Below are positions 1-49,801 of a stretch of 64,000 bases of DNA, piece after piece; the first letter of the stretch is position 1, and each line of letters opens with the position of its first letter. A program made the translations under genes and the position numbers. The stretch is taken from the NCBI GenBank assembly GCA_030704615.1, contig CM060732.1, forward strand, positions 77,624,001 through 77,688,000, read 5' to 3'. The notes below the pieces were generated by a model. It searched no databases and had not been told where the DNA came from. It saw only the letters and a program-made list of their open reading frames with translations. The stretch is from Takakia lepidozioides (lineage: Eukaryota; Plantae; Bryophyta).

Positions 1-3000
1 GAGCTGCAAAAGAAACATCCAAGCACACTCAGGCTAGAAATTATCCATATAATGGGTTTAACAAACATACCACACTGTCCAAAAGGATACACATTTTGAA
101 GTTGGGCGCGTGAAACACCGCCAAAAGACAAACTGTGATAGGCCAACCTACTTTACTTCCAATATCTATCATCACACCACCACATAAAATGGCAACTGTC
201 TGCAGAAGATTTGCAAGCCTCCAAAAAACCTAGGAGAGAGGTGAGAGCTTACCAGGGCAGACTGCCTCAGAGCCCTTCATGATTCGGAGCCTTTTCACAG
301 TACTTATAAAATTCCTGCATGAGCCCAACACACCTCACTTAGCCTAAAAGTCCCAGGCCAGCAGCACAAGTGAGGAGCCCCCGCAGAGAGGAAAGCTCCC
401 AAGAATGCAACAGACAATCACTTCAAACTTGAAACTTGAAACTTGAAACTTAAAGTGATTCATACACATCTCAATGTGCCATGACAACAGTAAAACCAAA
501 AGGGATTCACATTTGCATGTGACTTAAAAGGGGAAGGGATGAGGATAAGACACTTACTGCCAAGGGACATCGCCCACAAGCATGAGGTCCCCATCCTGGT
601 CCTCAAAGGTGAGCACAAAGTCGGACCCCTGCAGGAAGTTGACTTTCCGGTTGTTGCTGGACAAGGTGCTGCCATTCTCTCCAACGCTTGAGCTCTGTGA
701 GCCAGCAAGCTGGCCTGCATCAACAAATCAAAAGATTCTATCAGGTCAAAGCCCAGGTCCTCTTATTATCCAGTGGACATCATCACTCACAGGAACTGTT
801 GTGAATTTGAATCAGAACGAAGAGGCATGACCAGTTGAGATGAATGCTTTAGATGCACAATGTCCCTGGTGACAGAATGAAGCAGATTTCACCTAATATG
901 CAAGTGTCAAGGCATATATATCTGCACACAAAAGGAAAATGAGAGACCAGGGCCCGGAACAAACCATTGATGGGGGGTTGAAACATGTCTTCTAGTGCCC
1001 CAGACAACTTATCATAGCTGCAGTTTTTCTTCAAGTCCACCTTCCGGCCAATAGTGATCCCATCCATGTAGACCTTCACCAACCAGGAGTTTGGTGGTTG
1101 TGAGGATGGGGTACCTCCGTTGGCAGGGACTGTAGGAGCTGAAGGGGTAACAACTGCCGGTGGTGGGGCAGGCCTTGGTTGCGTTTCCTGAGGTGCAGGC
1201 CTTGGTGGCTGCCCTGCAATTGTGTTCTTGCGGAAAGGTCGAATAGGTGGCCAACCAACTACTTGCTGAGGCCTGCACAGGCCAGAAGGGAAGAAATGAG
1301 AGGACTACACATGCACAAGCAATCCAAGACCTTTACTAGAGTAGAATCAGAGGATGGAGCGGTACCAGCTTGTACCACACAACCAACCTACCAAACTTCA
1401 TTTAATTAGTTTCCACACAGCAGAGAATGAATCATACCACAAGGACCAAGTCTAGTTGCCTCCAGCACAAGATCAACAAATCTGAACAACTATTTACCTT
1501 GGAGCTGAGGCAGGTGTGGCTTCGTTAACCACAGCCGGCCGAGCCTCAGTGGAACCATGATGGTTAGACTCAGAAGGTGTCTCATGATGGGACACATCCG
1601 CACCCACCTCTCCTGCCTTGTTTGCCAGCTGGCCACGGGGGTTCCGTTGTGAGGGGAAAGGACCGCGTGCGTGCTCCAAACCAATCTGCTGCCAGGATGG
1701 TGGCTTTGGCCCCCAGGGATGCATGGCAGCCGGAGGTGTCCCTGGCTGATGCTTCACTTGTTGAGATGTCACTGGTACAGGCGCAGCCTCATCCCCCATG
1801 TTCCCGGACAGCTCTTCTCGAGAAGCCCCAGACATCCCTACCATGCCAAACCCATTTACACCGTCATTGAAACTACCAGTTCTGGACTCAGGTGCAGGAC
1901 TACCAATAGCCTCTGAGAAGCCTCGCTTAGCCCCCGCCACTCCTCCATATTTGGGAAAAACCATCCGAGATATTGGGTATGAACCATGCCTCCCCCCTGG
2001 GTATCCACACAATTGCCCCCCTTCATGCTCTTGAGAGGACTGTGGCATGGGATGATCAGATGTGCCCATTGTCATGCAAGTTCCTGCTGAAGCTGCCTTC
2101 ATCATCTGGGATCTTTGAGCATAGTACAGCTTCTGCATAGAAAACTCCTGCAAAATGGGAAGACGATCAAGAGGCCCCAGGAGATTATCCTGGGAGAAAC
2201 GGGATGCAGGTCTCTCCAGTGGATACCTTGTCTCTGGGCCTGATTGTGACATGCGGGATGGGCCCAGACCTTGTATGGAATCATGTGGTGATACCCCAGA
2301 GGTCGGCGTTTGGGTTTGTGAGGGTGCGACAAGGCTCCCTTGAATCCCTTGCATATCCGATAGGGACCCTTCTTGCATCATCCTCTCTTGTTTCGGCCTC
2401 TCCATGCTACTGGGTTGATCTAGGAGACTTCTTTCATACAATGGGCCTCCAGCAGATCCTTCTTGTTGCAAGACCCCATTGCTATTGCTTCTTTCAGGCC
2501 ATGCCCTCTCCTTAGAACCAGAGGTTTCATGAGAGGATGCTAGGGGAATTTGCTGTTGCTGCAATTTTTCCCGCTGCAGTTGCTTATGTTCCTCCATAGA
2601 CACCCCCTCTGCCACTTCATTGCTGGGTGCCATCAGGCCAATGCCTAGCATTAAGTTTTCAGTCATGCTTGTGTGCTCCTTGGCATGCTCCCGATATTGT
2701 TTCTGCAAAGAGTCGCAGTTTATAAATGTCTGGCAAGCACCACTCGCTGTAGACACGTCAGTAGGGAGACCCCTTGCTTCGTCTGAAGGTGTGTGGACAC
2801 CACCGTATGCAGCAAACCCCCGATCCATCGCATTTCTGTACTCGACACCAAATGGACTCTTTTCAGAGCAATGTTCTGCTGAGGAACTGTTCACATAGTT
2901 ACAACCCGCATCAGTCTGTGAAGGTGGTGCACTATGATCTTGAGATGAAGCTCCTCCAGGAGTAGAGTGCCCTCCTTCCTCTACGGCATTCACAACATGA

Positions 3001-3314
3001 TCTTGCAGATTGTAACATGCTCTACTTGAGGCAATGGCCTCCTCCTGAAAGGAAGACTCAATATCTTCCTCTTTCATGTGTCTACTGTTCAGCAGAGTAG
3101 CAGGCGGGCCAAGACGCAACTCCGTGGCACCCAAGTTCAAGTTAAGCTCCACCCCCTGCACCCTCTTCCCCTTCACGAGACATCGTGAGCCCTCCACATG
3201 TCGGGGGGATGAAGAAACCTCCGAAAGCCCAATGTAGTCATGCTCCCTGAGAGTAGTTCCACTCTGGCTGCTGTTTCCTTGTGATGTAGATGAGACTTTG
3301 GCATTCACATACAT
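1..3314 (-). CDS. IAA: Aux/IAA auxin co-repressor, long bryophyte type (3' end runs off the window)
   Basis: Exons 3314-1498, 1272-965, 714-558 and 314-253 are GT-AG and phase-consistent. The next acceptor (TTTCTTTTGCAG) opens an exon at position 3. Motifs: LREHDYIGLSEVSS, LNLNL and LRLGPP (EAR-like), GAKRGFSE (KR), degron VVGWPPIRPFRKN, PB1 (VKVYMDG..GRKVDL ... FEDQDGDLMLVGDVPW ... VKRLRIMKGSEA). The ORF-track start at 3491 is TTG; the first in-frame ATG is 3314. A possible extra upstream coding exon lies at 4171-4057. Confidence 0.93.
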
Positions 3315-5459
3315 GGTGTCCGAGTTTGCATCATCAGGGCCAAATGAGTCTAAACATGTCGAGTTATGGTCACCCGAAGAGTGAGGAAGGGAGCTGTGTG
3401 TGCCATTGGCAGTCGGACTATTTTGATGAAAACCATGGTTGCAAAGTGTGTTTCCAGGACCTCCCACATTCTGGACCCCTGCATAGAACAATGGGTTGTT
3501 TAGTCACCACTGGAGAACTCAATTCGCAATTCAGAGACGTGCCTCTAGCAACATCGAAAGCACTCAACATTGGGATGGTTGAGGATGACGAGTGAGCCTC
3601 TCTCCCCTAACATTCATAAGTTGAAATTCAGATATACGGGAGATCTGCGTGGCATTCAGCTGTGACTGCACTAGAGCCTATCTCCCCAGGCTGCTCTTAC
3701 TACCTCTCTCCTCGTCCCTCTTTGTGGCCTGATATATAACCTCTCTCGTAACTCCATCCTGACGCGTGCTGCACTACTAGTACTGGCTCCCCCCTGCAGG
3801 CCTCTCCATGACGGCTTCAACAAACCCTGATCTACAAGTGCTGCACTTTATCAAATTGTGCACCAGTACAGCAGGTGAAAATGGCACATTCATTTCAGGG
3901 TGCTGTGTCAGACGTCAGCAAGCATACAGCAGCAAGGAAACCAGTAACTTTCTTGAGGAGCATCTCTCGTTTTAGCATACATTTCTTTTCGCCTCATCTA
4001 CATTTTCGAAATGGAACATCTGACAGACAAAGTAAGAAGGGACTCGAGGAGCTGACCTGTACGCATTTCAGCCTTGCAAAGATCTGTGTAGGGAAATTTG
4101 TGCTGCAGACCTCGTACACTAGATGTGCTTTTGCTGCCGTAGGAACTTGTAGGTGACTCACATCTTGACATGGTGGATGATGGATAGGCAGGAACAGGCC
4201 ATTCCCTGGCCTATTAGTTAGTGGTTAAGACATCTGGTGAAGGTAACGTCCGCTCTCGAACCTCTCATGTCGTAGAGCTGTCATTGGCACACACACACGG
4301 AGACAGCTCCTTTCAGTCACCGGAAACAAAAGATATTCCCTTTAACAGCACAAGCGAGATCATTGCACAGTTCATCACCGATTGTTCCGTACTGCAACTC
4401 GGATCGTGGGGAAACGACGGAAACCAATGTTTGTCAATTACTGTGCAAAGCTCTCAAGGCGATCAACATTGCTAGGTACTACATTTACCGGGTTGCGGAT
4501 CCTCGACACAGACTCTCATCATACTGCTACGCTGTATATGGTCACAGAGTATGGGATGAGCAAGTAACAAGTACAAGTCAAGAGTTGCTTTGATAACCGC
4601 TGGAAAGGGATTACCATCCTCAGGGTATGTAAATTGCAGCGCAGGAAACCTAACACACAGATTTCCTTACACATAGTACTAAGGCTTCTCAATTCACTCT
4701 TCAGTGAATTCCCAAATTCACATGAACAATCAGGGGCACAAAGCGGGAGACCGTGCAGCCGATGTTCTTCTTAGACTATTTTCCAGCTGTTGCATCTCAG
4801 TTGAGCAGAGAGTGTCAAATGTGACAGTTGGATCCATCCTAAATCTAACTCAAACAAGCGCATGGTCAAGGTGACAGGCATCCACCACAGATCTGCAGAG
4901 AATCCACCACGCCTGGAGACAGATAACTCGAACCACGGTGCTCGTCCCTGGAGAGCTCCTACCAACTTGCTTAAGGCCAAGAAGACGTCACCACTACCAG
5001 AGACAGTAATCTAAACGCTGTACCGATCACTGAGAGTTTGTGCAAGCGAAGGTGAAGATCCGGAGTGCAAACCTATTAATGCCATGCCTTCCAAGACAAA
5101 AATGGAACAGCTTGGCCGCTACATACAACACCACACCTCTCCACAGCCAGCAAAGAGGGCGATAGGGCTAACAAGACCGACGAGAGAGAAAGAAGTAGCA
5201 CCTTCACTTCTCCCTCCTGAACAAACCGATGGAAATGATTTGGTTTTGGCTACAGAGGTTCGCTCCGCCACCTCGAATGACATTCCAAAACCACCAACCT
5301 CTCTTCTTCCTCAATCCAACATGCAATCTCGCCCCGCACGCATCCCTCTCTCTCTCTCAAATTTCACAGAACGCAGACTTCGACACCCCTTCCACAGACC
5401 GTCTACATACCTGCTCGGCTGGCGACCGGCAGTGACCGGTGGCCGGTCACCCACTCGGA

Positions 5460-24652: not shown

Positions 24653-24714
24653 GGGTGCCCCTCTTCCGCAGCCGCCACCGTGAGCTTTGAGCAGCCATGA
24701 CTGGATTGCTGGCG

Positions 24715-30100: not shown

Positions 30101-33100
30101 ATGATTCAAAACAGCCCTGATGAACTGGAGTATATTTCAATGGCTTATAATGCTCCCATTAGTTCTTCTGAGATTGTGGAAGCAATTGAACATTTAAATG
30201 GATATAAAGCTGGTGGACCTGATGGTATTGTCAACGAGCTTATCAAGCACGGTGGCGGTCCCATGATAGAGGCCCTAGTTCTCCTCTTCAACCTTATCTG
30301 GAAGACTGAAATGATCCCCTTTTGCTGGCGACAGGGGGTCATTGTCAATCTATACAAGAAGGGTGACAGAGAAGAACCGGGGTACTACCGTGGCATCACG
30401 CTCCTCAATGCTGTTGGCAAGACATTCTGCAGAGTTATAAGTACTCGTCTCGAGGTTGATCTGGAGTCTAGAGGTTGTTTCCACGAAGGCCAAGCTGGCT
30501 TTCGGCGAAACAGGGGCTGTGTGGATCATATCTTCACTCTAAGCCAGATTATCCAGGGAAGGAAAAAAGAAGGGAAACCCACTTATGTCTTTTTCCTGGA
30601 TGTCAAAAAGGCTTATGACACAGTGTGGAGAGATGGCCTATGGTTCCGCCTCTGGTCTTGTGGGATCAAGGGAAAGATGTGGAGAGTTGTCCACAACTTG
30701 TATGCTCACACCAAAAGCTGTGTCACTGTTAACGGACAGAAGTCCAACTTCTTTGACATAGACCAAGGTGTAGCTCAAGGATGTACTCTCTCCCCTCTGC
30801 TCTTCAATGTTTTCATCAATCAACTCCTCAAGGATGTGGAAAGTGAGGGATTTGGGTTAAGGGTGGGTGATACCACCATACCAGCCCTTATGTTTGCGGA
30901 TGACTTCGCAGGCATAGGGGAGACTCCAACCAATCTCCAGGAGTTGATTGATTGCGTGAAGAGATACTTTGATCTTTGGGGGCTAGAGGCTAATGTCAGC
31001 AAATGTGCAGTGGTAGCATTCAACGACAGAGGAGAGGGAGGAAGTGAACTTAAGTGGCAGTGGGGTAGTCAAGAAATCCCGGTCCTCCCGTCCTACACTT
31101 ACCTGGGCGTTGAGTTCTCCTCCAATTGTAATTGGGATGCACATATCCGGAAAGTTGTTCAAACTGGCAAGGGCAAAGCTCTGGGGCTCACTAAATTTTT
31201 CCACTGCAGAGGGGTCAACTCTGAGGTTAAGAAAACCATGCTTTGTCGGGAGTACGGATCTGCTATATGGGTTGATAACTCCAACCAGGCTAAGTCTCTA
31301 GAATCCATTCAAGTGGGGGTGCTTAAGGACTGTATGTCAGCATGCTCCAAAACAGCCAATGGGGCTGTTTGGGGTGAGTTTGGCATCCGTCCTTAAGCTC
31401 CCGATGAGATGAATTCAAGGTCAGATGGTGGGGTCAGCTGCAACATATGCCCAACACCAGATATCCTAAGTTAATCGACTCTATATCTTGGAAACAGGAC
31501 CGCCCTGTCAAACAGGCGAAGTCCTGGCAGAAGAGAGTAGAAGAGATCCTCAAGGACCTGGACCTGGATCCGCAAGTCTTGACCCTGCTGGATAAATCTG
31601 ACTTAGAGGCTGTAGTGTCCTCAGCCATGTCTGTTGCCATGAGATTGTCTGATGAAAATGAAGTTAGGCAGAAAACTTCCCTGAACTTGTTTCCAGTCTG
31701 TGACATGGGGGAGGACATCTTGGATGACCTCAAGGGTCTACCCACTCTCGGCACTAGACTGAAATTTAAACTCAGGGCAGGAAGCCTACCTTTGAACAGC
31801 AAACAGAAGCAGAGAGGAAAGGGAGAGTGCAATTGCCCATTGTGTGGGCAATCTGAAGACAGTATTCATTTTCTGATACACTGTCTGGGGTTCTCTCACC
31901 AAAGAGACGCTCTCTTCAAATCTATTAAGGGTATTGTGCCTGTACCCCTGTTTACCAACTTTGAAACTCTCGAGGCTGAGCCAAAAGCCCAGGCCCTCCT
32001 GAGGCCTAGTTTTTGGGCAAATCACACACAGCAGATTGATGCTTGTGTGAAGGGATTTCTACAGGATATCTGGAAAACCCAGATTAATTCTATATATGGA
32101 GGTAAGTCTTACTACCAACGTCAGCCCCTGACAGAGGTAGGTTCTGTCCCTTTTGTTCCTGCTCAAACTGGGCGCGAGGTCAATGGCCACAAGGCTACGG
32201 CAAACAACGTCTTATGAGTACAATCTCTACATCACCTACTTTTCTCTCTTCATGAAACTGAGGTCACGGGTGGACCATTGCCAGTCCTTTACATCATAAA
32301 AATTCCCTTGTTCTTCTATCTCTCTTTCCCTTTTTGTCAACTGAGTAACTCACGCATCTACTGGATGGTTAAAAGCCAGGATTGCAAAGCAGGACCTAGC
32401 AAGCCTTTATCTGCTAGAATCCATGCGTAACCCTACATCCCAAAACCCTAAGTGCGATGCTGATTAGTCCACTCCTGGGGAGATGATGGAGATCTTCCAA
32501 CAGAATTATTTTGGCTAGGCCAGTACATCATGCCCGACAATAGCAGTACAATGTGTTCTTGGGGGAATTAGTACCTGGGTTTTCCTTCGTTCTGCCTCTT
32601 CCTCCTAATGAACAAACACACAAACCACGCACCCCGTACATCATGTCAGTGTCTCTTGCTAAGAACATGCATTCACATACAATGTGGCAGTTACAAGTTG
32701 AACTTCCATAATGGGCTAAACAAGGTTTGCAATACAAATTACAAAACAAAGAAGCTAGCTCGAGTACCTAGCAGATACGTCAATATCTTAAATGGGACTA
32801 CCGTTAACACCAAAACTTGTCACACTAGTATTTCTGGAAGTGATCATTTTTTACACGCACACCAGGATTGATCCTAGTTAGAGAGGACTATAAAAGCTCC
32901 TGTGGCCAGTGTGAGACCCTACTGTAGCTTTATCTTCCCCAAAACACTTTGCCAAAACAGAAAGCAGAAAAGAAAGATGAGGGGATGGCAAATTGCCAGG
33001 CTGTAATATACGTACAGTCTTTCTCATGGATAGGTGCTGCTTCCTAAGTCTCATGTTCTCTTCCTTCAGTTGCGTAACTTCTGCTTCCAACTCCACTGTG

Positions 33101-34829
33101 TATGCCTACAAACCCCCACAAAGAACAAATTCTCCATTTACCCATCTCTATACAACTAAGAGTGTACCAATGGCAAGTAATTTGCATCAAGCTATTTGTC
33201 AAATGCAATTTTGGTAAAATTTCTGTATGGTTGCAACTTACTATGGTTCACAAAGGAACCATAGGATGCATTATTTTCAACTGCAGTTGCTGAACCTACA
33301 TGCTGCAATAGTGGTCACAGGTCTCTAACGTGCTTCCTTGGACTGGCATGCCTCTCTCTCCACATTAGGTTACAATATGAACGGTTGAAAAACATTACAT
33401 GCAACTGACCTGTTTTCGAGCCCTTGAGCGTGCAGCCGATTCCCGGTTCTTGATCATCCTCCTTTGCCGTCTCTCCACTACCCTCTCCACAGGGCCCTCT
33501 CCCCTCCTCTTTCTTCCTGCCTGAACTCCCTCCATCCCATAATGCATAGGGGACAAACCATTGTGTCCACTGTCTGAGTCGGGGCTGGGCGGGGATTCTG
33601 GGGCAATCCCCATATTCACCCCCATACCCATTCCTCCCCCTCCCATTCTCATTGCTAATCCGCCACCCGGCATACCACCTGCCATGTTAGGCCCCATGCC
33701 CCCACCCATGGGCCCTGCCAGCCCCATGCCCACCATGCCAGCCATCTGTACCACATGCCCGGGTCCTTTAGCCATCCTATTGGCTGCACTGGCATAAGCC
33801 GCTGCTTGCTGTTGAAGCATGTGTTGTTGCTGCATACTTTGAAGCCAGCCTGCCTGCCAATTTGATCCACATTTGAAGGATCTGTTATTTGATGGCTTGG
33901 CTAATTGTGACAAACTCCGTCTCCCATTGCAATCTGGGAGTAACCATCCTAGTTCACATCTACCAATAATGTTCAATCAAGTTGCACATGGTTATCCCTG
34001 CTTCCGAGCATAGCCGGTGGTGCATGCTTAAATTAACAAGAGGCAAGTACAATACACCACCAACGATAGGAACTATTTCAAGAGCACGCCAAATAAATAC
34101 CTGTTGCTGAGAAGCAGCTTGAGTTTTGAAGGCATCTATTTGCATGCTGTCAACTGTCGCTTGACTGGGATGCGCATTGGCAGTAGAAAGAGAGAGTATA
34201 GGTGCAATGTCTCCTCCTGCCCGGTCCCCTCCACCCTGTCCGTCTCTCTCTACTGACCCAAGGCCACCGCCAGCTGAAGAGAAGCCTTGGTTCCCAGAAT
34301 CCGGATCGTCTCTAACCACTCCAGCTCTCACTAAGAAGTCTTCCAGTGTCATCTCTCCAAAAGTGCCCTGACGCTGTTGTTGTTGTACACTGCTAGGGGC
34401 TCCTCCTCCAGCGTCGAATGTACCCCGACGAATATCTCTCCATACTTCGTCAACCGTTTTCAAGCCAAGCGTCTCTGGGAGAGTTATTGACCCCTGCCTC
34501 TGCAGGCTGGGTTGCCGGGTAAGCATCCCACTGGACCCTGTTCCACCTTCCCCAGTTCCTCCCATGGCAGCGGCCATGGCTTGACTCTCTTCTGCAGTCC
34601 ATATGTTCTTCAAAAACTCATCCATGTTCATAGATCCGAAATGCTTACCAGGATCAGTGATCGCATTTTGAAACTCGTCAAGAGTGAGAGAGTAGATAGA
34701 TGACTGCCTTGCGAGCGAGTTGAACCGGGTGATCCCGCTAGCGACATTGGAAGGCATGCCGTTGCTGGCATTTGATGGACCTGCAGGCTGGGGCTGTGTT
34801 TCTTGGGGACTCTCAGACTGCGGGCTCAT
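27127..34829 (-). CDS. ABI5: Group A bZIP transcription factor (ABI5/AREB/ABF family)
   Basis: Exons 34829-34101, 33853-33410, 33105-33016, 32604-32575 (30-nt mini-exon EEEAERRKTQ) and 27210-27127. C1 LARQSSIYSLTLDEFQ, C2 LQRQGSITLP..KTVDEVW, C3 RQGTFGEMTLEDFL, basic region RRQRRMIKNRESAARSRARKQAY, C4 LRRTRTANW*. The exon-3 donor is the least certain junction. The symbol is family-level. Confidence 0.9.
28055..32217 (+). pseudogene. LINE endonuclease/reverse transcriptase polyprotein, disrupted near the C-terminus
   Basis: ORFs 28016-31396 and 31447-32217 are separated by a 1-nt frameshift at about 31390 plus an in-frame TGA at about 31402. Confidence 0.85.
28140..28563 (+). repeat. Three tandem 141-bp (47-aa) in-frame repeats at the LINE ORF N-terminus
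   Basis: Units start at about 28140, 28281 and 28422, each encoding ..PKC.EP.R..EGFGTLNGLPILKVYTRR..S.HGV.VP. Confidence 0.9.
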
Positions 34830-35745: not shown

Positions 35746-36208
35746 CCCTCTTCGTCTTCCTTCCACCACCCGACCGTACCCGCCCACCCTTGCTCCCGGT
35801 TGGGAACGATGCCTATGATTTTTATTTCATTTTTCTTCTTTTTAGTTTTTAGTTTTTAGTTTTTAGTTTGTTTTTGGACAGTAGACAGTAGCCTCAAGAA
35901 AAAAATGAAATTGTGTAATAATATCATTGGCATGGTGTTGAAGAAAGGGATGCAGAAAACATATTTGTATCGTCCGGAGCCGTCACATCGGCATGCGCTG
36001 CGCCGTCGAGATCCCTGTTCAGGATGTTGATGTAATTTGGACTGAAAGTTATATTTATATTTAATCTGATATTTTAAAAACAACAACCCCAAGTGTTTGT
36101 CATGGTAGCTACCACTTCCTGCAATCCGGTATCAACCATTAGGTTCAATCTCAAGATTCACTCCCATAGCCATAGAGACTGTAGCTTTCCTTTCGGCAGC
36201 AAGCTTAC

Positions 36209-36430
36209 GCGTCTTGCCTTAGGCATTCAAAGGGCACAAGCCATGTCTATTTTGCGTCTTGCCTTAAGTCTACGAAGGGCACAACTGCTATGTCTATACC
36301 GCGTCTTGCCTTAAGTCTACGAAGGCACAACTGCTATGTCTATACTACGACTTGCCTTAAGTCTACGGAGGGCACATTTGTTATGTCTATTTTGCGTCTT
36401 GCCGTATGCCTACAAAGGGCACAAGCAATG
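36209..36430. repeat. Minisatellite, about 46-47 bp x 5
   Basis: Unit GCGTCTTGCCTTAAGTCTACGAAGGGCACAACTGCTATGTCTAT.. starts at about 36209, 36254, 36301, 36347 and 36394. Confidence 0.85.
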
Positions 36431-36456
36431 CAGAGGTAGCCTCCAAGCTTCTCAAA

Positions 36457-36719
36457 CAGCATTTTTTTTCTTGGCGAATTCTCACCAAATTTCGACCTCA
36501 AAAATAAAATAAAATATTCTGTCGCAATCCCCTGTTTTTTATGGATGAAATCACCAAACTTCTCAATAATTATGGATGATATTGCAAAATATGAATGATA
36601 TAAATGGATGAAAATTCCTAGGAAAATGATTCTATCCAAATTTCACTGGATGAACAGAATATACGGCTATTTCTTGTAGCCACTCGTGCTGTTTTCCAAA
36701 TTTCGAAAACAAATCGCTG
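36457..36719. mobile_element. Possible old hAT-like MITE
   Basis: Imperfect TIRs CAGCATTTTTTTTC / GAAAACAAATCGCTG. Flanking 8-mers TTCTCAAA / CTCCCAAC match 5/8. Internal ATGGATGA repeats. Confidence 0.35.
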
Positions 36720-38588
36720 CTCCCAACCCCCACCCTTTTGGACTCGGTGATCTAAGTTAGGTACTTCCGGCAGTAGGCGATTGGCTTAATTCGCTTGTTG
36801 TCACTTTATTTCCCTTTCCGTATGGGGCTTTACTTCTTTGTTACAGATCCTTTTTGTCTCACGTACAGTCACTTGCTTCATTGGGGTCTTTGGTTTGTTT
36901 CAAGTAAAAAGGTGAAAAGCCTCACGCCATGCTGCACACTCTGCAAGGGAAACCGCAAGTGTCGATTTGCTGTTTACTCTTTTCCATTCTAGACAAATAT
37001 TTAAGGAAAATAACTTATCCTTCCGTTCTAAATTGAAAAACTTTACCAGGCGAGTAAGGCTACAGAGTGACACCAACGAGAAACAAGGATGAATATCAGA
37101 TATATCATCTGTCGAGGGACGCAAAAGTCGGGACACATTCATCCATCTCGTACGGCACGACTTCGTCACGGTCTGCAATTTGCATGGGCTATTGAATGGC
37201 GAAATGACGGCGCCTGGACGCCGGCCACCTGGCAGACGGCGACGCGCTGGAAAGCCGGGCCACCCATCCAGTGCCACAGAGCACGGCTTTGCAAAGCCAC
37301 CACACGTGGCGGCCCCCGGACCCCTGCCCACCCCTTTGCATTATTCCCTTGCGCTCTACTTTAGCTCGCCCGAGCCGCCTGTTACTACTAGGGTTACTAG
37401 TTACCCGCCAACGGATGGACCAGTCACTGACCTAATTTCATTCATCCACACTTTACGCTTTACGCACGTGGGCTTACTATTATTATATGTTACTGAACTC
37501 CCCGAACCGTGCGACGGGCGACAAGTGGACGGACCAGCACTGAAGCCTCGTTCAACTCGTGTATTAGCCGACCGGTTCTACGTACATACGGCGCGCATAC
37601 GAAACCGGCTGGGGCAGACGGATGGATGACTACATCCATTCATCCCGCTATGTTGTGTGCCACACCTCTCTCACATCCTCTTCAGTGGTGATGGGGACTG
37701 CCTTTGTTGAGATGTTTAGAAAAGCATAGCACTGCCTGCCCGTTGCGCACAACAAATGCTCCAGAAAAAAATTTCAGTGAATGTTTCAAAGATGGGAAGA
37801 ATCGGGATGAAAGGCTATCAACTTCCGCACAAAAATCAGTTCCCTCACTAGTCGTGCTTAGATTGACATTGTCATACCACCAAAAAGCACAATCCTCAGT
37901 CTTGGTTGATGCACAATAGGCAGTCTATGAGATTTTGGAAGGCCGATGCTTGGCACTGGTTTTCTGGAGTCGAATTGACGTGCCAATGTTTGCAACCAGA
38001 AACCTAGTATACCATGTCAGATGGGATCCGAAGCAATTATGTATAATAACATGCCCGCGTAATTCACCAATGAAAAAAGTGTACATGGCCCTTTTAAGTC
38101 GACAAATTCAAACAACTTCCGCCAAGCAGCTCCTCTGCTTTTGACCTACGCTCTGAACAGACTCAGAATTGAGCACACAAAAGCTGCATACGCACACTCA
38201 TATCTTTTAAGCTAAAGCAACCCACTGTGCCAACTGTTAACCACACCACTTACCTGTAGATGTCACCCAAAAAAAAGAAAAAAAAATCAATTTAGAAGCG
38301 AAGATAGAAGCAAGATGGAAAGCAAAGACAATCAACTGAATGCCTTTACACTCCACCCAACTGCCTACCGAACTGCTTGGATGAGCCCAAGGCTATAATC
38401 CGTATGAGAATCTTGACGTACTTACCATAAATGAGAGGAGCAGCACACAAGTTCAGAAATCCAATAGGATAGTATGCCATGAATGGGAAACCACAATTCA
38501 AAGATCAATCAGCTGAGAAGAAACTAACCTTTCTTTGATAACCGACAAAGGATTGAGCTCGAGCAAGTGACCTATGTAGACGCAATGC

Positions 38589-41025
38589 TTAGGGTGGTGA
38601 AGTTGCAGATTGTAGGGGCTCCAACTCAACCAGCTCTTGTTCCTTTGGCACCTGCAAACGCCAACATCCCTTCCACAGTTCCTAACTCAGTTCTGTGGTA
38701 AAAGTGCAAACTCCTGAGGATAATCCTCACCAAGTAACACTCCCTCAATCAAATCAATACCAACCCACTCCACCAGATGGAAGCAGTTGTTCCAAGCTCC
38801 TTCAAGATCCAAGATGAGGCATAATCTGCATGCAGAGCCTCTTAATCATGGATCTCCCTGCAATCCATATGCACAACGCACAAGCCACCTTTAAAATGTC
38901 CTGAAGGTGGGAGAAGGAAAACTGCAGCCTAGTAGCCCTTGACTTGACCATGACTGAAGAGCACTAAGTTTGGGGTAGGATTGTCTCCCCCCTCATTCTC
39001 TAACAAAAACTCGGGTTGGTCTACATGCACGTATATTGTCTTATAGGAAGGGCAGGCTACCTCGCAACATTTAAGCTTCCTGATAGCATCCACTAGCCGC
39101 GCATCGCCAGCCACTTTTCGACAGTTTTGAATTAGATTCTCACGAGAAAGTCTCCCAGCCTGAAAACACAAGGTTGCCACAAATTGTGCTTACTGCTCAA
39201 CTTCGAGTTACACAAAGGTTCAAACAATTGAAGAGATGAGTTCCGGGAAGATAGCCTGCAGTGTAGCACCTTGAAGCTCAAATAGTGCTGCTGCAATAGG
39301 AGGAGCTGTGATGGTGCCAGCTGTGGTTGTAAAACATGGAACAGACTGGCGAATGATAGGCAGGTTGACGTGGGGCCCTGCACCTGCCACAAGCACATTT
39401 ACCCACCTCATTAGGCCATGGCTCTGCTCTCAATTGTGTCTTAGACCATCCACACCAATGAGTACACACAATCCCTGCACCCACACACCAATCTGCATTG
39501 AAAGAACAAGTTATCCTTTTGCAAGCCTTTCCACTGCCTGTCTTCTGCAAATACAAATAACCAATAAACCACAACCCTGCAACATCTCCGGCCACCAATG
39601 GCTATCACAAGTTCAACCGACTATTTAATATCAGGAACACTCCAAAAAAAGAATGAACTACTTGACTCAGATATCAGGCAAGAGTCACTATCCAATCCCG
39701 AAGGCAACAAGTGCACACTATGACGACAGAGAGCAGTTTCAACCATGTGAGATCAACAGACCTGGCTGTACATGGGTGAAGGCCTCCCCAATACTTCAGT
39801 ACATCTCCTTGCATTTCCTCCTGTTGTTTCAAGTTTTATCTCTGGTACACTCACTTTTCCGGGAAGCTGCCTCTGCTTACCTCTGACTGCTGCGATCACC
39901 GCTGTAGACAAACATAAGCAAGCTTCAGCCAGGACCTTTACTGAAGACCCATAACCTGAACAGCACCCTCAGCAAACAACGACTGCTGCACCAACGGAAC
40001 TTGGACAGTTTACCCGGAGGAATGTAAAGCAAAAACACTTACCGTGCCATTGAGGAGAGAGCTTGAATCGTATGACATAAAGGGGTAAAATGTGAGTGTT
40101 CATGTGTGTACTCCACACAATCAACCGCTTGGGAGCAAGCAGTTCATCTACACCAGTGTCAAAGTGCTCACTACTAGGGTGGAACTGATCTGAGCCTGGC
40201 TTCACCAACTCTGTTGCCCCTAGTATGACTTGACACAACACAATGTGCTGCTCCCCATTTTCATCATTATCTGCATATACCACACTGCACCCCAAACCCT
40301 CATGTAATCTCACTACCAGTACAACACACCATAACACATCTCAAATTCTGACTGCTCTCAATCAAAACATCACAACCAACCCTCTGCCCTTGCTAAAAGA
40401 AGGAAATTTTCAAAAATATGATGTAGGGATGACAAGAACTACAAGCTCTGTCTATCCAGTTCACCATTCATATTGTTGACAAAATGCTTCACCTGACATC
40501 AGCATGATTTTCTGGGGCAAGATAAACTCCAACACCATAAGCTGAACCATTCTTCGGTTTTCTAGGCTGCCCAAAGCCATGGAGAATGATTCCAGATACG
40601 CCCATCTTTGAAGTCCCATGCCAGCCATATTGCACATTGGCATCTCTTCGAGTCTGTTTTGTCAACTCTTTCCATCTTTCAAAGCCTTGCCGTCGTGCCT
40701 TTCCTGCAGGGCTAGAGTGATTATCTTGATAGATTGCCTTGATATCCACACCCGAACTAAAAAGACCGAGTCCTGCCAGGAAGTGTGTTTTCACTTTTTC
40801 AAATTCTTTGTCTCCATCATGCAGCCTCATAAGCTTGTTATCTAGTAAAGCATAGTCATGACCACTCCCCAAATTGAGAGTCTGCTCTTTTGAAACCCCT
40901 GCATGATGCTTGACTTGTCCAGATATCACTTTTACATCTGCTGCCTCATGCCCTGAGTTTCCTCCATTGCTTGTGATTTCACTCCCAGATGGTCCTTCAT
41001 GAGAGGTCCCAGACATCCCTGCCAT
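38589..41025 (-). CDS. SRO: SRO/RCD1-family protein (PARP-like catalytic domain + RST) with an Aux/IAA-derived N-terminus and no WWE domain
   Basis: Exons (41025 or further upstream)-40493, 40284-40043, 39901-39795, 39383-39270, 39159-39061 and 38651-38589. PARP motifs: YGWHGTS, YGVGVYLAP, DENGEQHIVLCQVILG, FHPSSEHFDTGVD, VWSTHMNTHILP. RST motifs: PTSTCLSFASLF..YLSFKAGRLSRENLIQNCRKVAGDARLVDAI. The start codon is uncertain. Confidence 0.85.
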
Positions 41026-44000
41026 ACCTTCAACAAACCTGCTCCTGGTCTCAAAGAAATTACCATTCCTGGACTCAAAAACCGGACCTCCAATGTCCTC
41101 AGAAAAGCGACGCTTGGCACCAGCCAGACCTCCAGTCTCAGATGCTGGAATGGCAATCCTGGATAATGGAGGTGAGCCATTCTGCCTGCAAGAAAATCCA
41201 CTACAAACGCACGGCCCTCATGCTGTTGCAAGCTCTGTAGCATGCAGTGATCAGGAGTATCCCCTGCACGTTGGTTCTCTGCTGTAGCTTCCTTCATACT
41301 CTGGGCATGCTGGCCATAGTACAGCTTGGAAATTTCCTGCAAGTTACGAGTTCCATCAAGACCAAGGAGACCATCTTGGGACAAACAGGATACAGGGGTC
41401 TCCTCGCGGTGCCTCACCTCCGGGACTGATTGGGATGGTTGCAGACCGTGCATGGAATCATGTCCTCTTACCCCAGAGGTAGCTGTTAGGGCAGATTCAA
41501 CAAGGCTGCATTGCATCCCCTGCATCTCCTTGGGTGAATGGTTCGCAGAAAGGGAGCCTTCCTGCATTATCCTCTCTTGCTTCAGCCTCTCCATACTACT
41601 GGTTTGATGACGGGTACCTCTTCCATAAGACGCCATTCCTAGAGGTTTCTCTCCAATGCATCCTTCCCCGTTTCTCTCATATTTCGCAGGCCATGCCCTT
41701 TCCTTAGCACAGGAGATTTCTTGAGAGAATACAGGTAGTTGTGGGGCCAGAAGCTGTACCTTGTCCTGCTGAAGTTGGTTCATCTCCATCATAGAGCACC
41801 TTCCCAGGGGCCGAAACATATAGTTTTCCAACCTGTCCTCAGCAGGTGCCACCTCAAGGTCCAGTCTTAAGCTTTCAGTCATGCCTGGGGAGTTTTTAGC
41901 ATGCTTCCCATGTCGTTTTTGCAAGGAGTCAAAAGCACTCCTCCCTGTCAGTGTGTGGACATCATTGGAAGCAGCAAACTCCCAATCCATTGCATTCCTG
42001 TTGTGAGCAGCATATGAACTCGTTTCAGAGACAGATTCACGGTCTATTGCAGAACTGTTCTCAAAGTCCCCACCTGCCCTAGTCTCAGGTTCACTTTGGT
42101 CTATACAGGCAGCTTCTCCAGTCGCAGGAAGACCTCCACTCTGTAGAGCATTTGAAACATGCTCTTGCAGATGATGCCCGGCAGAGGTAATGGCACCACC
42201 CTGAAAGGAGGATATGTGGTCTCCCCCTTCTTTTGTGTTTCTACCAATCAGAAGAATGGCAGGTGGGCCTAGCTGCAGTTCCGTAGCACGTAAGTTCAAG
42301 TTGCACTGCACTGTCTCTGCATGTGTGAGACATTGTGAGCTCTCCAGACTCTGGTAAGATGAGGAAACCTCTGAAAACCCAATGTAATCGTGCTCCCTAA
42401 GAGTGGTTCCACTCTGGCTGCTGACCACTCGTCCAGATGCAGGGCAACCTCTGTTCTGTACAGCATCTGAAACCAGCTCTTGCAGATGATGGCGTGCAAT
42501 ATCTGAGGCATCGGCACCCTTCTGACAGGGAGACCTGTTGTCTACCTCTTCTTTCATGTTCTATCTAACTCAATCAGCAGACCGGCGGGTGGGCCTAGCT
42601 GCAGCTCCATGGTAAGTAAATCCACCCCCTGCACCCTCTCTGCATGCATGGGAAACTGTGAGCTTGCCAGATTCTGAGAAGGTGAGGAAACCTCTGAAAG
42701 CCAGATGTTGTCATGCCTTATAAGAGTAGTTCCACTCTGGGTGCAATGTCCCTTTGAGGGAAACAACACTTTGGCATCCGCATCCATGGTGTTAAAGTTT
42801 AAAGAATGACAGCCAGAGGTGTCTAACCACGAGCATTCACCACGGTTGCTTGCAACCCGCATCGAGGTTTGGCCGGAACCTGCTGCCCCATTACTGCCAT
42901 GGTTGAGGGTATGGGCCACATGACTCCATACGGCCGTTTTGGCATTCCAGCCAATACTGGAAAACAGAGGAGGAGAACAGCGGGTACCTACAGCCTGGCC
43001 ATTTAGAGGGGAGTCATGGCTGACACAAATGTGACTGCCTCCACGACCCCCCACATTCTGCGACCATGCACAAGAACCATGACTCGCTTTACCAGAGCTC
43101 CACACTCACATCACTTCAGATGGAGCCACTGAACATATGAAACTGACCAGTTATCTTGCAAAGCAGTGGAAGGCTCTCATGCATTTGATTCCGCATAGTA
43201 ATGTTTCCCTGGCCCAACTCCATAACCTCCTCTTAAAAGCTGCCTTCCTTTGCCTCTCTTAAGAGACATAGATATACCATGTTTCTCTTCCTACTCACAG
43301 CTTGCTCTCTTGTCTGTCTCTATATCATGACCTGCTCAGACTCCTTTCCCTTGCCCTCCACACGTTATTTCTTTCCAGCTTACGTGATCTGTCTAATTCA
43401 CCAAGCTATGATGTAGAAGGTCACCTGAGAAACTCCCAGTCAACACTTAGAGCGCATAGAGTGCATTACTTGTACCGTCTCCCCCTTTCGGGTCCTCTGT
43501 GATGACTCAACATGACCAACACGTAAAATGATGTTCACTTTCTTGAGTTTCAGCACCATTATGGCATCTCAACATGAGACATTCACCTGTAAGTGTTGTC
43601 TCATGTAAGCAGAGCATACACCAGCGGTTTTGATAAATCAATGCAGCACCTTTGTTACGGTGTCTTTTTAGAAACTATTTCATCACCTCTGTATTTTTCA
43701 GAACTGATCATGTGGAAGTCCATCTCTCCTGGGTGTGTAGGCGTTTTATGAACACACTCGGCATATCTCAACGTTGATAGGGATTACCGGCGTTGCCCTA
43801 TATGCACTTGAGCCTATGTATTGAGCGATTCCTGCTGTAGACCTTGAATGCTAGTCGTGTTTGTGCCGCTGAAGGAACTGGGAAGTGGCTAACATCCTGA
43901 CATGGATGACCGCGGATAGGCACAAACAGACCAGTCCCTGGCTTTGTGACTTAGTGATCAAGTAAATTTGGAGAAGGCACCAGCAGCTCTCAAACCCTGC

Positions 44001-44100
44001 AGTTCATGCAGCTGCCATCCACACATACTCAGGCATGCCCCCTTCAATACACATAAACAATTCCTGATTCCATGGTCAAGACAAATTTTGATCCTTAGCT
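40895..44100 (-). pseudogene. Diverged duplicate of the Aux/IAA 5' region and first large exon (no degron or PB1), with two frameshifts
   Basis: Colinear similarity to about 1740-4330: SQNVGG, SQSGTTLREHDYIGFSEVSS, ATELQLGPPA, KERAWP, SSMERLKQERIMQEGSLS, GAKRRFSE, GMAGMSG, EAA.V.V.S.QVKH. Frame changes at about 42557 and 41205. Confidence 0.88.
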
Positions 44101-46033
44101 AAATCACACCAGAATTGGGAATCTTCCTATGTTTTTGTAGTGGCAGCTCTGGCGGGACGCCATGGAAACCTATATTAGATTAAAGACTATGCATGGTCCC
44201 GTGCTGCTCGCTATATGGACCCACATGGGTCTCCCTGGATTTAATTTCTATGACAGGAGGGTGTGCCTGCGCAAGGTGAGTTTGTATTGAGTCTGACGCA
44301 CCTTGAGGGAATAGTCAATCCGGCATATCAATCCTTGGGGAGCCGGGGATATCTATTCACACAATATGAAAACTCCCCGAAATCGACGAAAGGGACACAA
44401 TGATTTCGAGGAAAGATGTCCGGCCAGAGCTGCGCTGCGAGAGAAGGAAGTGGCACGATCTGCGGCCTGTTGCTCGTCTATGCGCCACTTTTCCCTCCCC
44501 TCTACGAGAATTCATGACCCTTTCAACTAAAACCAAAAACTCTTTACCTTGTCGACATTACTGCCAGAGTGTTCATGCCGAATAAACGACGATCCACTCA
44601 CTTACAGGGAGTTTTTGACCCAAGAGACAATATTGATTCAGTATGCTGCTCTAGCTCCTATCTAGCCCAAATGTGACAGAGCCACTATTGCCCTGCCTAA
44701 GAACCAAAGACGCAGCTTTCAGGCTACATACCTTTGGGCGATCCAACTCCATGCCTTCCCACTTTCCTACGGCCAACAAAGACAGGTAGATAGCGAAGCG
44801 ATAAGCACGAGTGGATCGCCCACCTTCATCTTTATCGGCGCTGAACCTTGCGTCGCGCCATGACCTCGGAATGACTGCAGCAGCCTTGCCCTGTAGTCCG
44901 CTAACGAGACTTAAGAACCAGACTTGAGAATATCAGAACTTTCAAAGTTTGTGGCACGTTTGTGTATCTCCACGACCCTATTCTTCAAACCTGTGTTTCA
45001 AGACGTTTCAATGACATCAAACGGCTGGGTGAGTTGGGAGGGGAAGCGCTGCCACACTGACCAACGAACCCTCGGCCAACAAACCAGATTCTCAGCTCTT
45101 CCAACAGAACTTCACATATTCTGGCGATTTCACACACCAACTTCTTGGAGATTGATCACACAACCCCATGCACACACATTCTTACAGCTCTCTAAAACTC
45201 TCTCGACATTGCAAATGCAATTGTACAGAAAGAAAAAAACTCGTCCACAGATCCACTCAGCGTGTGTCCGTTCATTGGGCTCTTAGTTGGCTAGACAAAC
45301 AAGGTCAAACTTGGGACACATCGAGTAATCTACAAGAGAGATGCTTCCCCATACTTACTATGGTACACCAGTGAGGAATGTAAAGAACCACCAGAAGGTC
45401 AGAAGGTCAGAAGAGTGTAGAAGACTGTAGAGAGTCCTTCCCAGTCTGACAATTTGGGTCAGTGAGACAGTATTTAATGACTTGCTTCTCCTCTTCAGCT
45501 TTCCCGTCTTCTTCTGAGAGTCTCTCATTCTCTCTTTCTCATGTTTATCCTAGCTTTAGGATTGGCAATCCTTCTTGGGCCACAAAATCCCTGCATAGTC
45601 TCTATTGTACGTTTAGAAGTTCTGCAGCACTAACTTGGTGTAACAGACACTGAATGTGAAGTACCGCAAATTTGTTGCTCAATTCAGCATGTAATAAGAA
45701 AGGATGCAATTGCATGATCACAGCATACATGATACAAGTTCATTTGTTGGAGATTGAAGATGAAGCATGATAGACCTGCGACGCTTAGGCATTGCGGCCC
45801 AATGGTCCATGAAAGTACACAGTCCTAGCAGGTTGCAGAAGTATCATTTGGCCTTAGGTTTCCTACTATCTGTTGACAGGCCCTCTCCAAGAGGGTTTTG
45901 CAAAGCTTCGGTGCCACAGTTCGATGGTAATTCGCATTGCATGATCATGACCATGGACAGATACTACCTGTCATTGCGGAAATGGCATGAGTACATTCTT
46001 TGTCTGTCTGTCTGTCTGTCTCGTATGGCACAA

Positions 46034-48872: not shown

Positions 48873-49724
48873 ATGAGTGGGTTGGTGGAGGGTTTGGGTT
48901 CCCTCAGAATGGCTCCAGGCAGAGAGCCCTTGAGCAGGAGTTGGTGGAAGGATTTTACAGGTGCAGCATTACGTGTGAAGACCCCGCCGCTCTTGGTCGG
49001 CAGTTCAGCTGATCAGAAAGGGGCAGGCCGGCAAGGGAATGATGGAGGGGGGCTTACCCGACGATTAGGATTGTTGGATATTATCTTACTGGGAATTGGA
49101 GCATCCATTGGCGCGGGTATTTTCGTGGTCACAGGCACTGTCGCCCACGATCTGAAGCGTCCCATCTCATGAATCTTCACGACGAGAAACAATTTCTGGC
49201 AGAGGGGAGGAATGAGTGGTGAAATTCTTGTTTCCTCCTTTGTTCGCAAGCTTGTTTTTGTTTTTGTTTGTTACATGTCCTTGTCGGCTGTGGCTTATTG
49301 GTAGCTTCTGCTCACAATCTCTATCTAAGAATCAGGTTGAAGCAGAATGTTAGTCAAATTGGTCTCAGGCTTATATTGGTTGCAACTCTTCTTGGTCAGG
49401 AAGATCTGTATAGGCCATACTATCTTGCAGTCATGGCCCAGCCACTCATTCTTTTTAAACTACTTTAGTGAATTTGCTCCTTTTGGCTTGGATTGGAGAG
49501 GTTGTTGTTTTGTTGGACAATTTCTATTTCGTGTAAGTTTTGATCAAGCTTGGGTGCTTTCGATTTTTAAACCCTGGACAACCTGGTCATTGCAGAAAAG
49601 TTCTGACTGCAAACTCATGGTATTACAGGGGTCGTATTGAGTTTTGCGCTGGCAGGTGCCGCCTGCGTGCCGAATGCTCTCAGCTATGCAGAACTTTCCA
49701 GCCGCTTTCCAGCTGTAGTGGGGC
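48873..49724 (+). pseudogene. Cationic amino-acid transporter (CAT9-like) 5' fragment
   Basis: Exon 1 encodes LTRRLGLLDIILLGIGASIGAGIFVVTGTVAHD, with the expected AGP/donor junction missing. Exon 2 from 49629 encodes GVVLSFALAGAACVPNALSYAELSSRFPAVVG, then reads straight into the PPR ORF. Confidence 0.8.
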
Positions 49725-49801
49725 ATCGGCAGGGGATCCAGCATAGTTGGCCACGATTTCAGGTCCCACTTTGTACATTACTCCCCTCTCTCTCTCGTCA
49801 T

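What the first reader, a model, noticed from the sequence alone, without database searches (positions are those of the whole stretch)
38589..43105. Chimeric Aux/IAA-SRO gene: auxin-repressor N-terminus joined mid-exon to a PARP+RST protein
Seen: a diverged copy of the Aux/IAA first large exon, about 39 kb from the original and on the same strand, runs without an intron into an SRO PARP domain. In one open frame (from ~41218) the IAA-derived GGLAGAKRRFSED..GMAGMSG..GHEAADVKVISGQVKHHAG (parent: GGVAGAKRGFSEA..GMVGMSG..GDEAAPVPVTSQQVKHQPG) continues at ~40895 into LDNKLMRLHDGDKEFEKVKTHFLAG. The downstream PARP/RST exons are intact. Known: RCD1-type SROs normally carry an N-terminal WWE domain and bind transcription factors through RST; Aux/IAA EAR/LxLxPP motifs mediate repression, and the GWPPV/I degron confers auxin lability. 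Inference: the locus swapped WWE for IAA sequence (KR/NLS-like motif, possibly EAR motifs) and lost the degron and PB1. It could be an auxin-stable, TF-binding co-regulator driven by an IAA-derived promoter. I know of no description of such a fusion.
Basis: partly seen in the sequence, partly recalled or inferred. Interest (0 to 1): 0.88.

Follow-up and report, generated by a model that had tools for sequence, protein, structure and literature searches.

The report
Expressed Aux/IAA–SRO fusion gene in moss
A moss-type plant has a real, spliced, expressed gene that joins the repressor end of an auxin-signalling (Aux/IAA) protein, without its auxin-sensitive parts, to the transcription-factor-docking half of an RCD1/SRO stress regulator; I found no other example of this protein layout.

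Summary
On the minus strand, an old diverged copy of the neighbouring Aux/IAA first exon (47-55% aa, 64-69% nt identity) runs without an intron, at about 40897/40896, into an SRO PARP-like domain. Spliced exons that complete PARP and RST follow.

Transcript contigs from two independent studies are colinear with the window from 44013 to 40493. They then splice through five GT..AG introns, so the junction is transcribed.

In the window assembly the IAA-like part is split over three frames. Both transcriptomes carry small indels at exactly those breaks. With them, the mRNA has one open frame of 1101 codons (about 1000 aa from the first ATGs). It encodes:
- two domain-I copies that keep the moss TOPLESS-binding LxLxPP motif;
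- a KR motif;
- a PARP-like domain with an H-Y-R triad;
- a complete RST domain.

The degron, PB1 and WWE are all absent.

The claimed "WWE swap" cannot be shown, because the closest SROs (Sphagnum) lack WWE. No protein with this layout appeared among 1.84 billion representatives or in the literature searched.

The function is inferred, not shown: an auxin-insensitive adaptor that brings TOPLESS to RST-binding factors. Still open are whether the reference frameshifts are real, single-molecule proof of the transcript, and conservation in relatives.

The parts
43111..44013 (-). Transcribed, unspliced 5' leader of the chimeric mRNA. It is also IAA-derived.
   Evidence: X1 contig record 1 is colinear with the window over 44013-40493. 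Colinear nucleotide similarity to the leader of the neighbouring IAA: 43779-44060 with 4038-4329 (66%, E 6e-31), and 43462-43625 with 3770-3933.
40493..42862 (-). Coding part of exon 1. First ATG is at 42862. The second ATG, at 42787, aligns with the neighbouring IAA's first ATG. The exon holds the IAA-derived region and the N-terminal half of the PARP-like domain.
   Evidence: With the transcript indels applied, one frame is open from 43110 to the exon end.
42587..42724 (-). Domain-I copy A. It is degenerate (LIRHDNIWLSEVSS ... MELQLGPP) but retains LxLxPP.
   Evidence: tblastn; tandem duplication 42432-42744 vs 42117-42421 at 73% nt; alignment A1.
42261..42401 (-). Domain-I copy B. It is well kept (LREHDYIGFSEVSS ... 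NLNLRATELQLGPP) and retains LxLxPP.
   Evidence: Alignment A1 with Sphagnum, Diphasiastrum and other IAAs; 70% identity to the neighbouring IAA.
41098..41121 (-). KR motif (GAKRRFSE) of Aux/IAA origin.
   Evidence: Aligned with GAKRGFSE of the neighbouring IAA.
40864..40914 (-). Fusion junction. The last IAA-like residues, VKHHAG, end at 40897. SRO-like sequence starts at about 40896 (VSKEQTLNLGSGHDY..).
   Evidence: IAA tblastn ends at 40894. SRO homologues start at 40896-40860. The SRO paralogue transcript loses similarity beyond 40861.
40495..40863 (-). PARP-like domain, N-terminal half (WHGTSK, GVGVYLAPENHADV).
   Evidence: Pfam PF00644; PDB SRO1 7PLQ and RCD1 5NGO.
40043..40284 (-). Exon 2: PARP-like domain, C-terminal half. 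The third triad position is R (KRLIVW).
   Evidence: RCD1 5NGO, E 4e-21. Intron 40285-40492 is GT..AG in the transcripts. The same intron position occurs in Sphagnum fallax SRO.
39760..39901 (-). Exon 3: linker. The transcripts carry 33 extra in-frame bases at about 39856.
   Evidence: tables 5, 5c and 8.
39269..39381 (-). Exon 4: RST domain, first half.
   Evidence: PF12174 positions 2-36, E 6.6e-7.
39059..39158 (-). Exon 5: RST domain, second half.
   Evidence: PF12174 positions 34-66, E 7.8e-6.
38523..38649 (-). Exon 6: last coding exon, with the stop at 38591-38589. A 3'UTR intron follows, and the transcript resumes at about 38247.
41206..41210 (.). The window has 2 bases more than both transcriptomes here. 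In the assembly this breaks the frame between the EAR-bearing part and the PARP part.
   Evidence: table 4; sequence. With the transcript version, the alignment to the neighbouring IAA is continuous.
42561..42570 (.). The window has 5 bases more than both transcriptomes here. In the assembly this breaks the frame between domain-I copy A and copy B.
   Evidence: table 4; sequence.
1494..3491 (-). Neighbouring canonical Aux/IAA gene, large first exon. It is the paralogue of the copied segment. Its degron exon lies at about 978-1274 and a PB1 exon at about 557-715.

Best explanation
This is a lineage-restricted, expressed chimeric protein-coding gene. A DNA-level duplication copied the 5' leader and the first roughly 585 codons of an Aux/IAA first exon. 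The copy was joined in frame, exon to exon, to an SRO gene just upstream of its PARP-like domain, and it replaced the SRO N-terminus.

The mRNA encodes about 990-1020 aa. The product has two domain-I copies with the moss LxLxPP TOPLESS-binding motif, a long low-complexity stretch with the KR motif, a PARP-like domain (H-Y-R) and a complete RST domain. It has no degron, no PB1 and no WWE.

Inferred mechanism, not shown: the RST domain docks onto RST-binding transcription factors and the LxLxPP motifs recruit TOPLESS. Because there is no degron, this would be auxin-independent repression. It would be a natural counterpart of Aux/IAA in which the ARF-binding PB1 is replaced by the SRO hub module.

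The frame breaks in the window are probably consensus errors of the assembly.
For: Transcription across the junction:
- Spliced contigs from two studies (X1 of 2021, X2 of 2017) run colinearly over 44013-40493 (X1) and 42087-40493 (X2). They then pass five GT..AG introns.

The frame is restored in the transcripts:
- They lack 2 bases at 41206-41210 and 5 bases at 42561-42570. This gives one open frame of 1101 codons.
- It also restores the ancestral frame, which aligns continuously with the neighbouring IAA.

Long-term coding constraint on the IAA-derived part:
- dN/dS is 0.45-0.58 and dS is 0.6-0.7.
- Third codon positions are the least conserved.
- 0 of 5000 neutral simulations stayed stop-free at 18% changed sites, and 22 of 5000 at 9%.

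Domains:
- PARP and RST are intact.
- The SRO part aligns end to end with Sphagnum fallax SRO aa 145-494 at 56% identity.
- Both domain-I copies keep LxLxPP. Mutating this motif abolishes PpIAA-PpTPL interaction (PMC3443911).

The window differences look like errors:
- Window-specific substitutions are 2 transitions to 15 transversions, which is unlike natural polymorphism.
- The old frames stay open for hundreds of codons after each break.

The leader is also duplicated.
Against: - In the window assembly the coding frame is broken three times. No genomic reads of the reference individual could be laid.
- The window-versus-transcript differences are 17 non-synonymous to 6 synonymous. That is what errors would give, but relaxed constraint would give it too.
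- Logan contigs are assemblies, so one contig does not prove single molecules span leader to stop.
- In X2, upstream contigs are shallower (3-5 against 10.7).
- No orthologue was found, so conservation is unknown.
- Domain-I copy A is degenerate.
- TOPLESS binding, transcription-factor binding and protein existence are all untested.
Confidence: 0.68

Rival explanations
1. The IAA-derived sequence is only a long 5' leader, or a separate overlapping transcription unit. The protein actually made would start at an internal ATG (for example 41025, MAGMSG..). That would give an ordinary WWE-less SRO of about 400 aa with about 40 IAA-derived residues.
For: The window frameshifts would be harmless under this reading. 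Differences from the window are mostly non-synonymous. X2 coverage falls towards the 5' end, and assembled contigs can merge overlapping units. The Sphagnum relatives are 472-506 aa PARP+RST proteins.
Against: A stop-free frame of 1101 codons is very unlikely for non-coding sequence that differs from its paralogue at 31-36% of sites (0 of 5000 simulations). dN/dS is below 1 and codon position 3 is the least conserved. The LxLxPP, LREHDYIG.SEVSS and KR motifs are kept.
Confidence: 0.15
2. The chimera is a decaying gene. In the sequenced reference individual the frameshifts are real, so the locus is a transcribed pseudogene, or is split into an EAR-only ORF and a PARP-RST ORF. Other accessions would still carry the intact allele.
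For: There are three frame-breaking complex indels, none in a homopolymer. Non-synonymous to synonymous differences are 17:6. Its k-mer depth is lower than that of the SRO and IAA paralogues (43.6 against 152 and 346 in X1; depth is a poor measure of expression).
Against: Window-specific substitutions are 2 transitions to 15 transversions, which is typical of consensus errors and not of polymorphism. Two independent samples agree on the intact frame. After each break the old frame remains open.
Confidence: 0.12
3. The junction is an assembly chimera of the genome.
For: None was found beyond the general possibility.
Against: Independent transcript contigs from two studies cross about 40895 colinearly with the window, with more than 1 kb on each side.
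Confidence: 0.02

Closest known systems
SRO family (RCD1/SRO1 type A: WWE-PARP-RST; type B: PARP-RST), especially the WWE-less moss SROs such as Sphagnum fallax KAH8953982.1
   Same: PARP-like domain followed by a C-terminal RST. The intron after ..ENHADV is conserved. Identity is 78% in PARP and 56% over 362 aa to Sphagnum. The H and Y of the triad are retained, as reported for moss SROs (PMC2848248).
   Different: The N-terminal 135-265 residues are replaced by about 630 aa of Aux/IAA origin carrying two LxLxPP motifs and a KR motif. There is no WWE.
Aux/IAA repressors, including degron-less non-canonical members
   Same: Domain I (LREHDYIGxSEVSS + LxLxPP), the KR motif, the long moss-type first exon and the 5' leader are homologous.
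   Different: Both domain II (GWPPI) and PB1 (PF02309) are lacking, so it cannot bind TIR1/auxin or ARFs in the known way. Known degron-less IAAs keep PB1 (my own knowledge, not tested here).
EAR-motif adaptors and engineered EAR (SRDX-type) repressor fusions
   Same: The predicted logic is the same: a TOPLESS-recruiting motif tethered to a module that binds transcription factors. PMC3443911 proposes LxLxPP fusions as a repressor tool in moss.
   Different: This one is natural. The tether is an RST hub domain rather than a DNA-binding factor. This is a resemblance of mechanism only and is untested.

Membership tests
SRO (SIMILAR TO RCD ONE) | PARP-like catalytic-core domain | tested here: met
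   PF00644, E 2.9e-7, on the exon-1 piece. PDB SRO1 7PLQ (E 7e-10) and RCD1 5NGO. Groups with moss SROs in the tree.
SRO (SIMILAR TO RCD ONE) | C-terminal RST domain | tested here: met
   PF12174 positions 2-36 on exon 4 and 34-66 on exon 5. The exons are joined in the transcripts.
SRO type A (RCD1-like) | N-terminal WWE domain | tested here: not met
   A WWE HMM built from 6 hits found nothing in six-frame pieces of the whole window (best E 3.4). There were no Pfam WWE hits.
Aux/IAA | Domain I with an EAR-type motif (LxLxL or LxLxPP) | tested here: met
   Two copies, at 42610-42587 and 42302-42261. They are in frame with the rest only in the transcript version.
Aux/IAA | Domain II degron (GWPPV/I) | tested here: not met
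   No GWPP in the model or in any frame of 36000-46000. The neighbouring IAA has VVGWPPIRP at about 1253.
Aux/IAA | PB1 (domains III/IV, PF02309) | tested here: not met
   No PF02309 hit on any piece. C-terminal parts of IAA homologues match only 557-1274, never the chimera locus.
Chimeric gene formed by DNA-level partial duplication | Both source families identifiable, introns kept in the recipient part, and a transcript across the junction | tested here: met
   Single-molecule proof of the full-length transcript could not be obtained with these tools.
Active ADP-ribosyltransferase | H-Y-E (or H-Y-I/L) triad and NAD+ binding | tested here: inconclusive
   H (WHGTS) and Y (GVYLAP) are present. 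The third position aligns to R, against N in RCD1 and L in PARP15. Activity cannot be tested here.

The most novel reading that the evidence does not exclude
The gene encodes a working, auxin-insensitive co-repressor. It would tether TOPLESS through two LxLxPP motifs to the transcription factors that dock on the SRO RST hub (DREB2- or NAC-type). In this moss lineage that would convert a stress-signalling hub into a dedicated repressor and rewire part of the auxin-repressor machinery to stress regulation.
Probability: 0.3. Interest if true: 0.8.

Novelty: new variant of a known kind. Interest (0 to 1): 0.62.

Why it matters
It would be a natural experiment in modular rewiring of plant transcriptional repression. 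The TOPLESS-recruiting end of Aux/IAA is detached from auxin perception (degron) and from ARF binding (PB1), and is attached to the RST hub that binds many stress transcription factors.

It gives a directly testable case of new-gene origin by in-frame exon-to-exon fusion. Both source families, the junction and the expression are all visible.

It also flags that the reference assembly probably carries small consensus errors here that would make gene callers miss or split the gene.

Tried and rejected
- **WWE exons.** I looked for WWE exons upstream or anywhere in the window with an HMM on six-frame pieces. None was found.
- **Orthologous chimeras.** phmmer of the 242-aa junction-spanning piece against 1.84 billion representatives gave 330 hits. 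In all of the best 150 the best-scoring stretch lies in the PARP part. None has PARP beyond residue 700, and the long hits carry WWE.
- **Neighbouring IAA exon search.** Only IAAs at 30-48% identity came back, with Sphagnum and Diphasiastrum the only named species. There were no proteins from organism A, so that collection cannot speak for close relatives.
- **Runs X3 and X4** (other organisms of study P2) had no contig at 80% likeness or more.
- **Is the neighbouring IAA the highly expressed IAA-like contig?** No. Its loose ends differ at 10 of 30 bases, so a third paralogue exists and 'parent' is better read as 'nearest paralogue in the window'.
- **Literature.** Searches for an IAA-SRO, EAR-RST or TOPLESS-RCD1 fusion found nothing relevant.
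- **Earlier notes of this scan** had nothing at this place.
- **Spliced model.** I did not send the joined spliced model to any search tool. Searches were exon by exon, by reference. The joined model was used only inside local scripts, for the frame check, alignment, dN/dS and a tree.
Full report
**What is in the window**

The gene lies on the minus strand. The ORF at 1494-3491 is the long first exon of a canonical Aux/IAA gene. Its degron (VVGWPPIRP, about 1253) and its PB1 exons (978-1274 and 557-715) follow downstream.

About 39 kb away on the same strand lies a diverged copy of that exon:
- parent aa 74-506 match 42422-41160 in frame -3 (47% identity, E 3e-74);
- parent aa 494-585 match 41208-40894 in frame -2;
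- a further partial copy of the domain-I region lies at 42826-42575 in frame -1;
- that partial copy comes from an internal tandem duplication, 42432-42744 against 42117-42421, at 73% nt identity.

The frame that is open from 41217 continues from the IAA-like ..VKHHAG directly into SRO sequence. It carries a Pfam PARP hit. Downstream exons complete the PARP-like domain (RCD1 5NGO, E 4e-21). They also supply an RST domain in two halves, PF12174 positions 2-36 and 34-66.

In the assembly as given, the IAA-like part is split over three frames. The EAR-bearing part is not in frame with PARP.

**Transcripts**

Two small runs of one organism, from two studies (X1 of 2021 and X2 of 2017), hold about half of the sampled words. 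Their Logan contigs, laid on 38201-44100, show the following:
- A 4469-nt contig (X1) is colinear with the window from 44013 to 40493.
- It then skips 40285-40492, 39902-40042, 39382-39759, 39159-39268 and 38650-39058. Every skip has GT..AG on the minus strand.
- A sixth intron lies in the 3'UTR.
- X2 has a 2541-nt contig with the same structure, reaching up to 42087.

Spliced contigs can only come from RNA, so the junction at about 40895 is transcribed in two independent samples.

One caveat remains. These are assemblies of short reads, not single molecules.

**The frame problem**

Both transcriptomes differ from the window by small indels exactly where the frames break:
- 2 bases fewer at 41206-41210;
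- 5 bases fewer at 42561-42570;
- 4 bases more at 43103-43109;
- 33 extra in-frame bases in exon 3.

I applied these in a local script. The spliced mRNA then has a single open frame of 1101 codons, from 43110 to the stop at 38591-38589. ATGs lie at 42862 and 42787, and the second aligns with the neighbouring IAA's first ATG. With the transcript version, the alignment to the neighbouring IAA is continuous through the former break. The transcripts therefore carry the ancestral frame.

I think the window's breaks are more likely consensus errors than real alleles, for these reasons:
- Of 17 substitutions shared by X1 and X2 against the window, only 2 are transitions. The X1-only differences show a mix closer to natural polymorphism.
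- After each break the old frame stays open for hundreds of codons.

This is not proven. The indels are complex rather than homopolymer slips. No genomic reads of the reference individual were available.

**Is the IAA-derived part coding?**

Evidence that it has been kept as coding sequence, measured against the neighbouring IAA over 472 aligned codons:
- dN/dS is 0.45-0.58, with dS 0.6-0.7.
- Identity by codon position is 0.73, 0.74 and 0.60.
- In simulations of neutral change, 0 of 5000 sequences stayed stop-free at 18% changed sites, and 22 of 5000 at 9%.

The open frame has therefore been maintained for most of the copy's history.

Evidence that weakens this:
- The recent differences between window and transcripts are 17 non-synonymous to 6 synonymous. 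Errors or relaxed constraint would both give this pattern.
- The region is low-complexity: 57% of its residues are S, G, P, Q, E, T, A or N.

**What was kept and what was lost**

Kept:
- Domain-I copy B (42401-42261) keeps LREHDYIGFSEVSS and NLNLRATELQLGPP.
- Domain-I copy A (42724-42587) is degenerate but keeps MELQLGPP.
- The KR motif, GAKRRFSE, is kept.

Moss Aux/IAAs use LxLxPP in domain I, and mutating it abolishes interaction with PpTPL1/2 (PMC2708152, PMC3443911).

Lost or absent:
- No degron or PB1 exists at the locus.
- No WWE exists anywhere in the window.

**The SRO part**

Its PARP region is closest to the Sphagnum PARP+RST proteins, which lack WWE (78% identity). It sits in a polytomy (SH-aLRT 92) that also holds a WWE-bearing Ceratodon SRO.

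The whole SRO-derived part aligns with Sphagnum fallax SRO aa 145-494 at 56% identity. In S. fallax the N-terminus and the first PARP half share one exon, and the intron after ..ENHADV is conserved. The fusion is therefore exon-to-exon on both sides and kept the recipient's introns. It arose at the DNA level, not by retroposition.

What it replaced cannot be decided. It was either a roughly 140-aa WWE-less N-terminus or a roughly 265-aa WWE-bearing one. A more abundant SRO paralogue transcript in the same organism is about 85% identical in nucleotides. It loses similarity beyond 40861 and has about 1.46 kb upstream of the shared splice site, which is compatible with a WWE type. That remains a hint only.

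The triad reads H-Y-R. This is consistent with the remark that moss SROs keep more conserved triads (PMC2848248).

**Extent of the duplication**

Colinear similarity to the neighbouring IAA continues upstream through the long leader, to 44060 matching 4329 (66%, E 6e-31). The transcript's 5' end, at 44013 or beyond, lies inside that block. The chimera therefore inherited the IAA leader and probably the start region. Promoter similarity beyond that point is not detectable.

A third, highly expressed IAA paralogue exists elsewhere in the genome. The neighbour is therefore the nearest paralogue in the window and not necessarily the donor.

**Comparison and novelty**

An exhaustive phmmer search of the junction piece against 1.84 billion representatives found 330 SRO-type proteins. 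None had IAA-like sequence in front of PARP. The word-indexed search with the IAA exon found only ordinary IAAs. Full-text searches found no description of such a fusion.

That collection evidently lacks this organism's own proteins. Absence of orthologues therefore says little about close relatives.

By membership test the protein is an SRO (PARP-like plus RST) with a foreign N-terminus. It is not an Aux/IAA, because it fails on both degron and PB1.

**Mechanism**

Shown:
- architecture;
- splicing;
- expression in two samples;
- an intact frame in the transcripts;
- retention of the motifs.

Inferred:
- RST docks onto transcription factors, as in RCD1.
- The LxLxPP motifs recruit TOPLESS.
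- Lack of the degron makes the protein insensitive to auxin.

I give about 0.68 to 'real, expressed, in-frame chimeric gene' and about 0.3 to the specific co-repressor function.

The joined spliced model was never sent to a search tool. Searches were exon by exon, by reference. The joined model was used only in local scripts.

Noticed in passing
window 39855-39857: Both transcriptomes carry 33 extra in-frame bases in exon 3 of the chimera that the window lacks. This is either an indel polymorphism or a collapsed stretch in the assembly.
   Followed up: partly
window 43462-44060 vs 3770-4329: The chimera and the neighbouring Aux/IAA share a leader of about 1 kb, unspliced in the chimera's transcript, with blocks at about 66% identity. 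That is as conserved as the coding part, so the leader may hold regulatory elements such as uORFs.
   Followed up: partly
window 40493-44013: Window-specific differences from two independent transcriptomes are strongly biased towards transversions (2 transitions to 15 transversions, many T>G on the + strand) and include complex small indels. This suggests residual consensus errors in this assembly that could break other gene models too.
   Followed up: partly
not in the window (contigs of runs X1/X2 laid at 41546-42651): A third, highly expressed IAA-like paralogue (k-mer depth 346 in X1) matches conserved patches of the chimera but is not the neighbouring IAA.
   Followed up: partly
P0189 (Sphagnum fallax SRO) aa 112-172 vs 176-236: Sphagnum WWE-less SROs carry an internal duplication of the helical segment that precedes the PARP core.
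   Followed up: no
window 28016-31396 (+): An uninterrupted 1126-codon open frame (the table-11 ORF tool starts it at TTG) that reads by eye as a non-LTR (LINE-type) retrotransposon protein. It contains a peptide block of about 50 aa repeated three times near the N-terminus (..GFGTLNGLPILKVYTRR..).
   Followed up: no
window 49637-51976 (+) and 56168-56770 (-): The C-terminal part of a 779-codon open frame (the table-11 ORF tool starts it at TTG, and its first ~50 residues look unrelated to PPR) reads as an intronless DYW-type PPR protein. PPR fragments nearby may be a decayed paralogue.
   Followed up: no
window 24697-25440 (+): Intronless ORF that looks like elongation factor 1-beta, judged by eye from the translation. 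It may be a retrogene.
   Followed up: no
window 33395-34829 (-): Two adjacent ORFs that read by eye like the N-terminal and basic-region parts of an ABI5-type bZIP gene.
   Followed up: no
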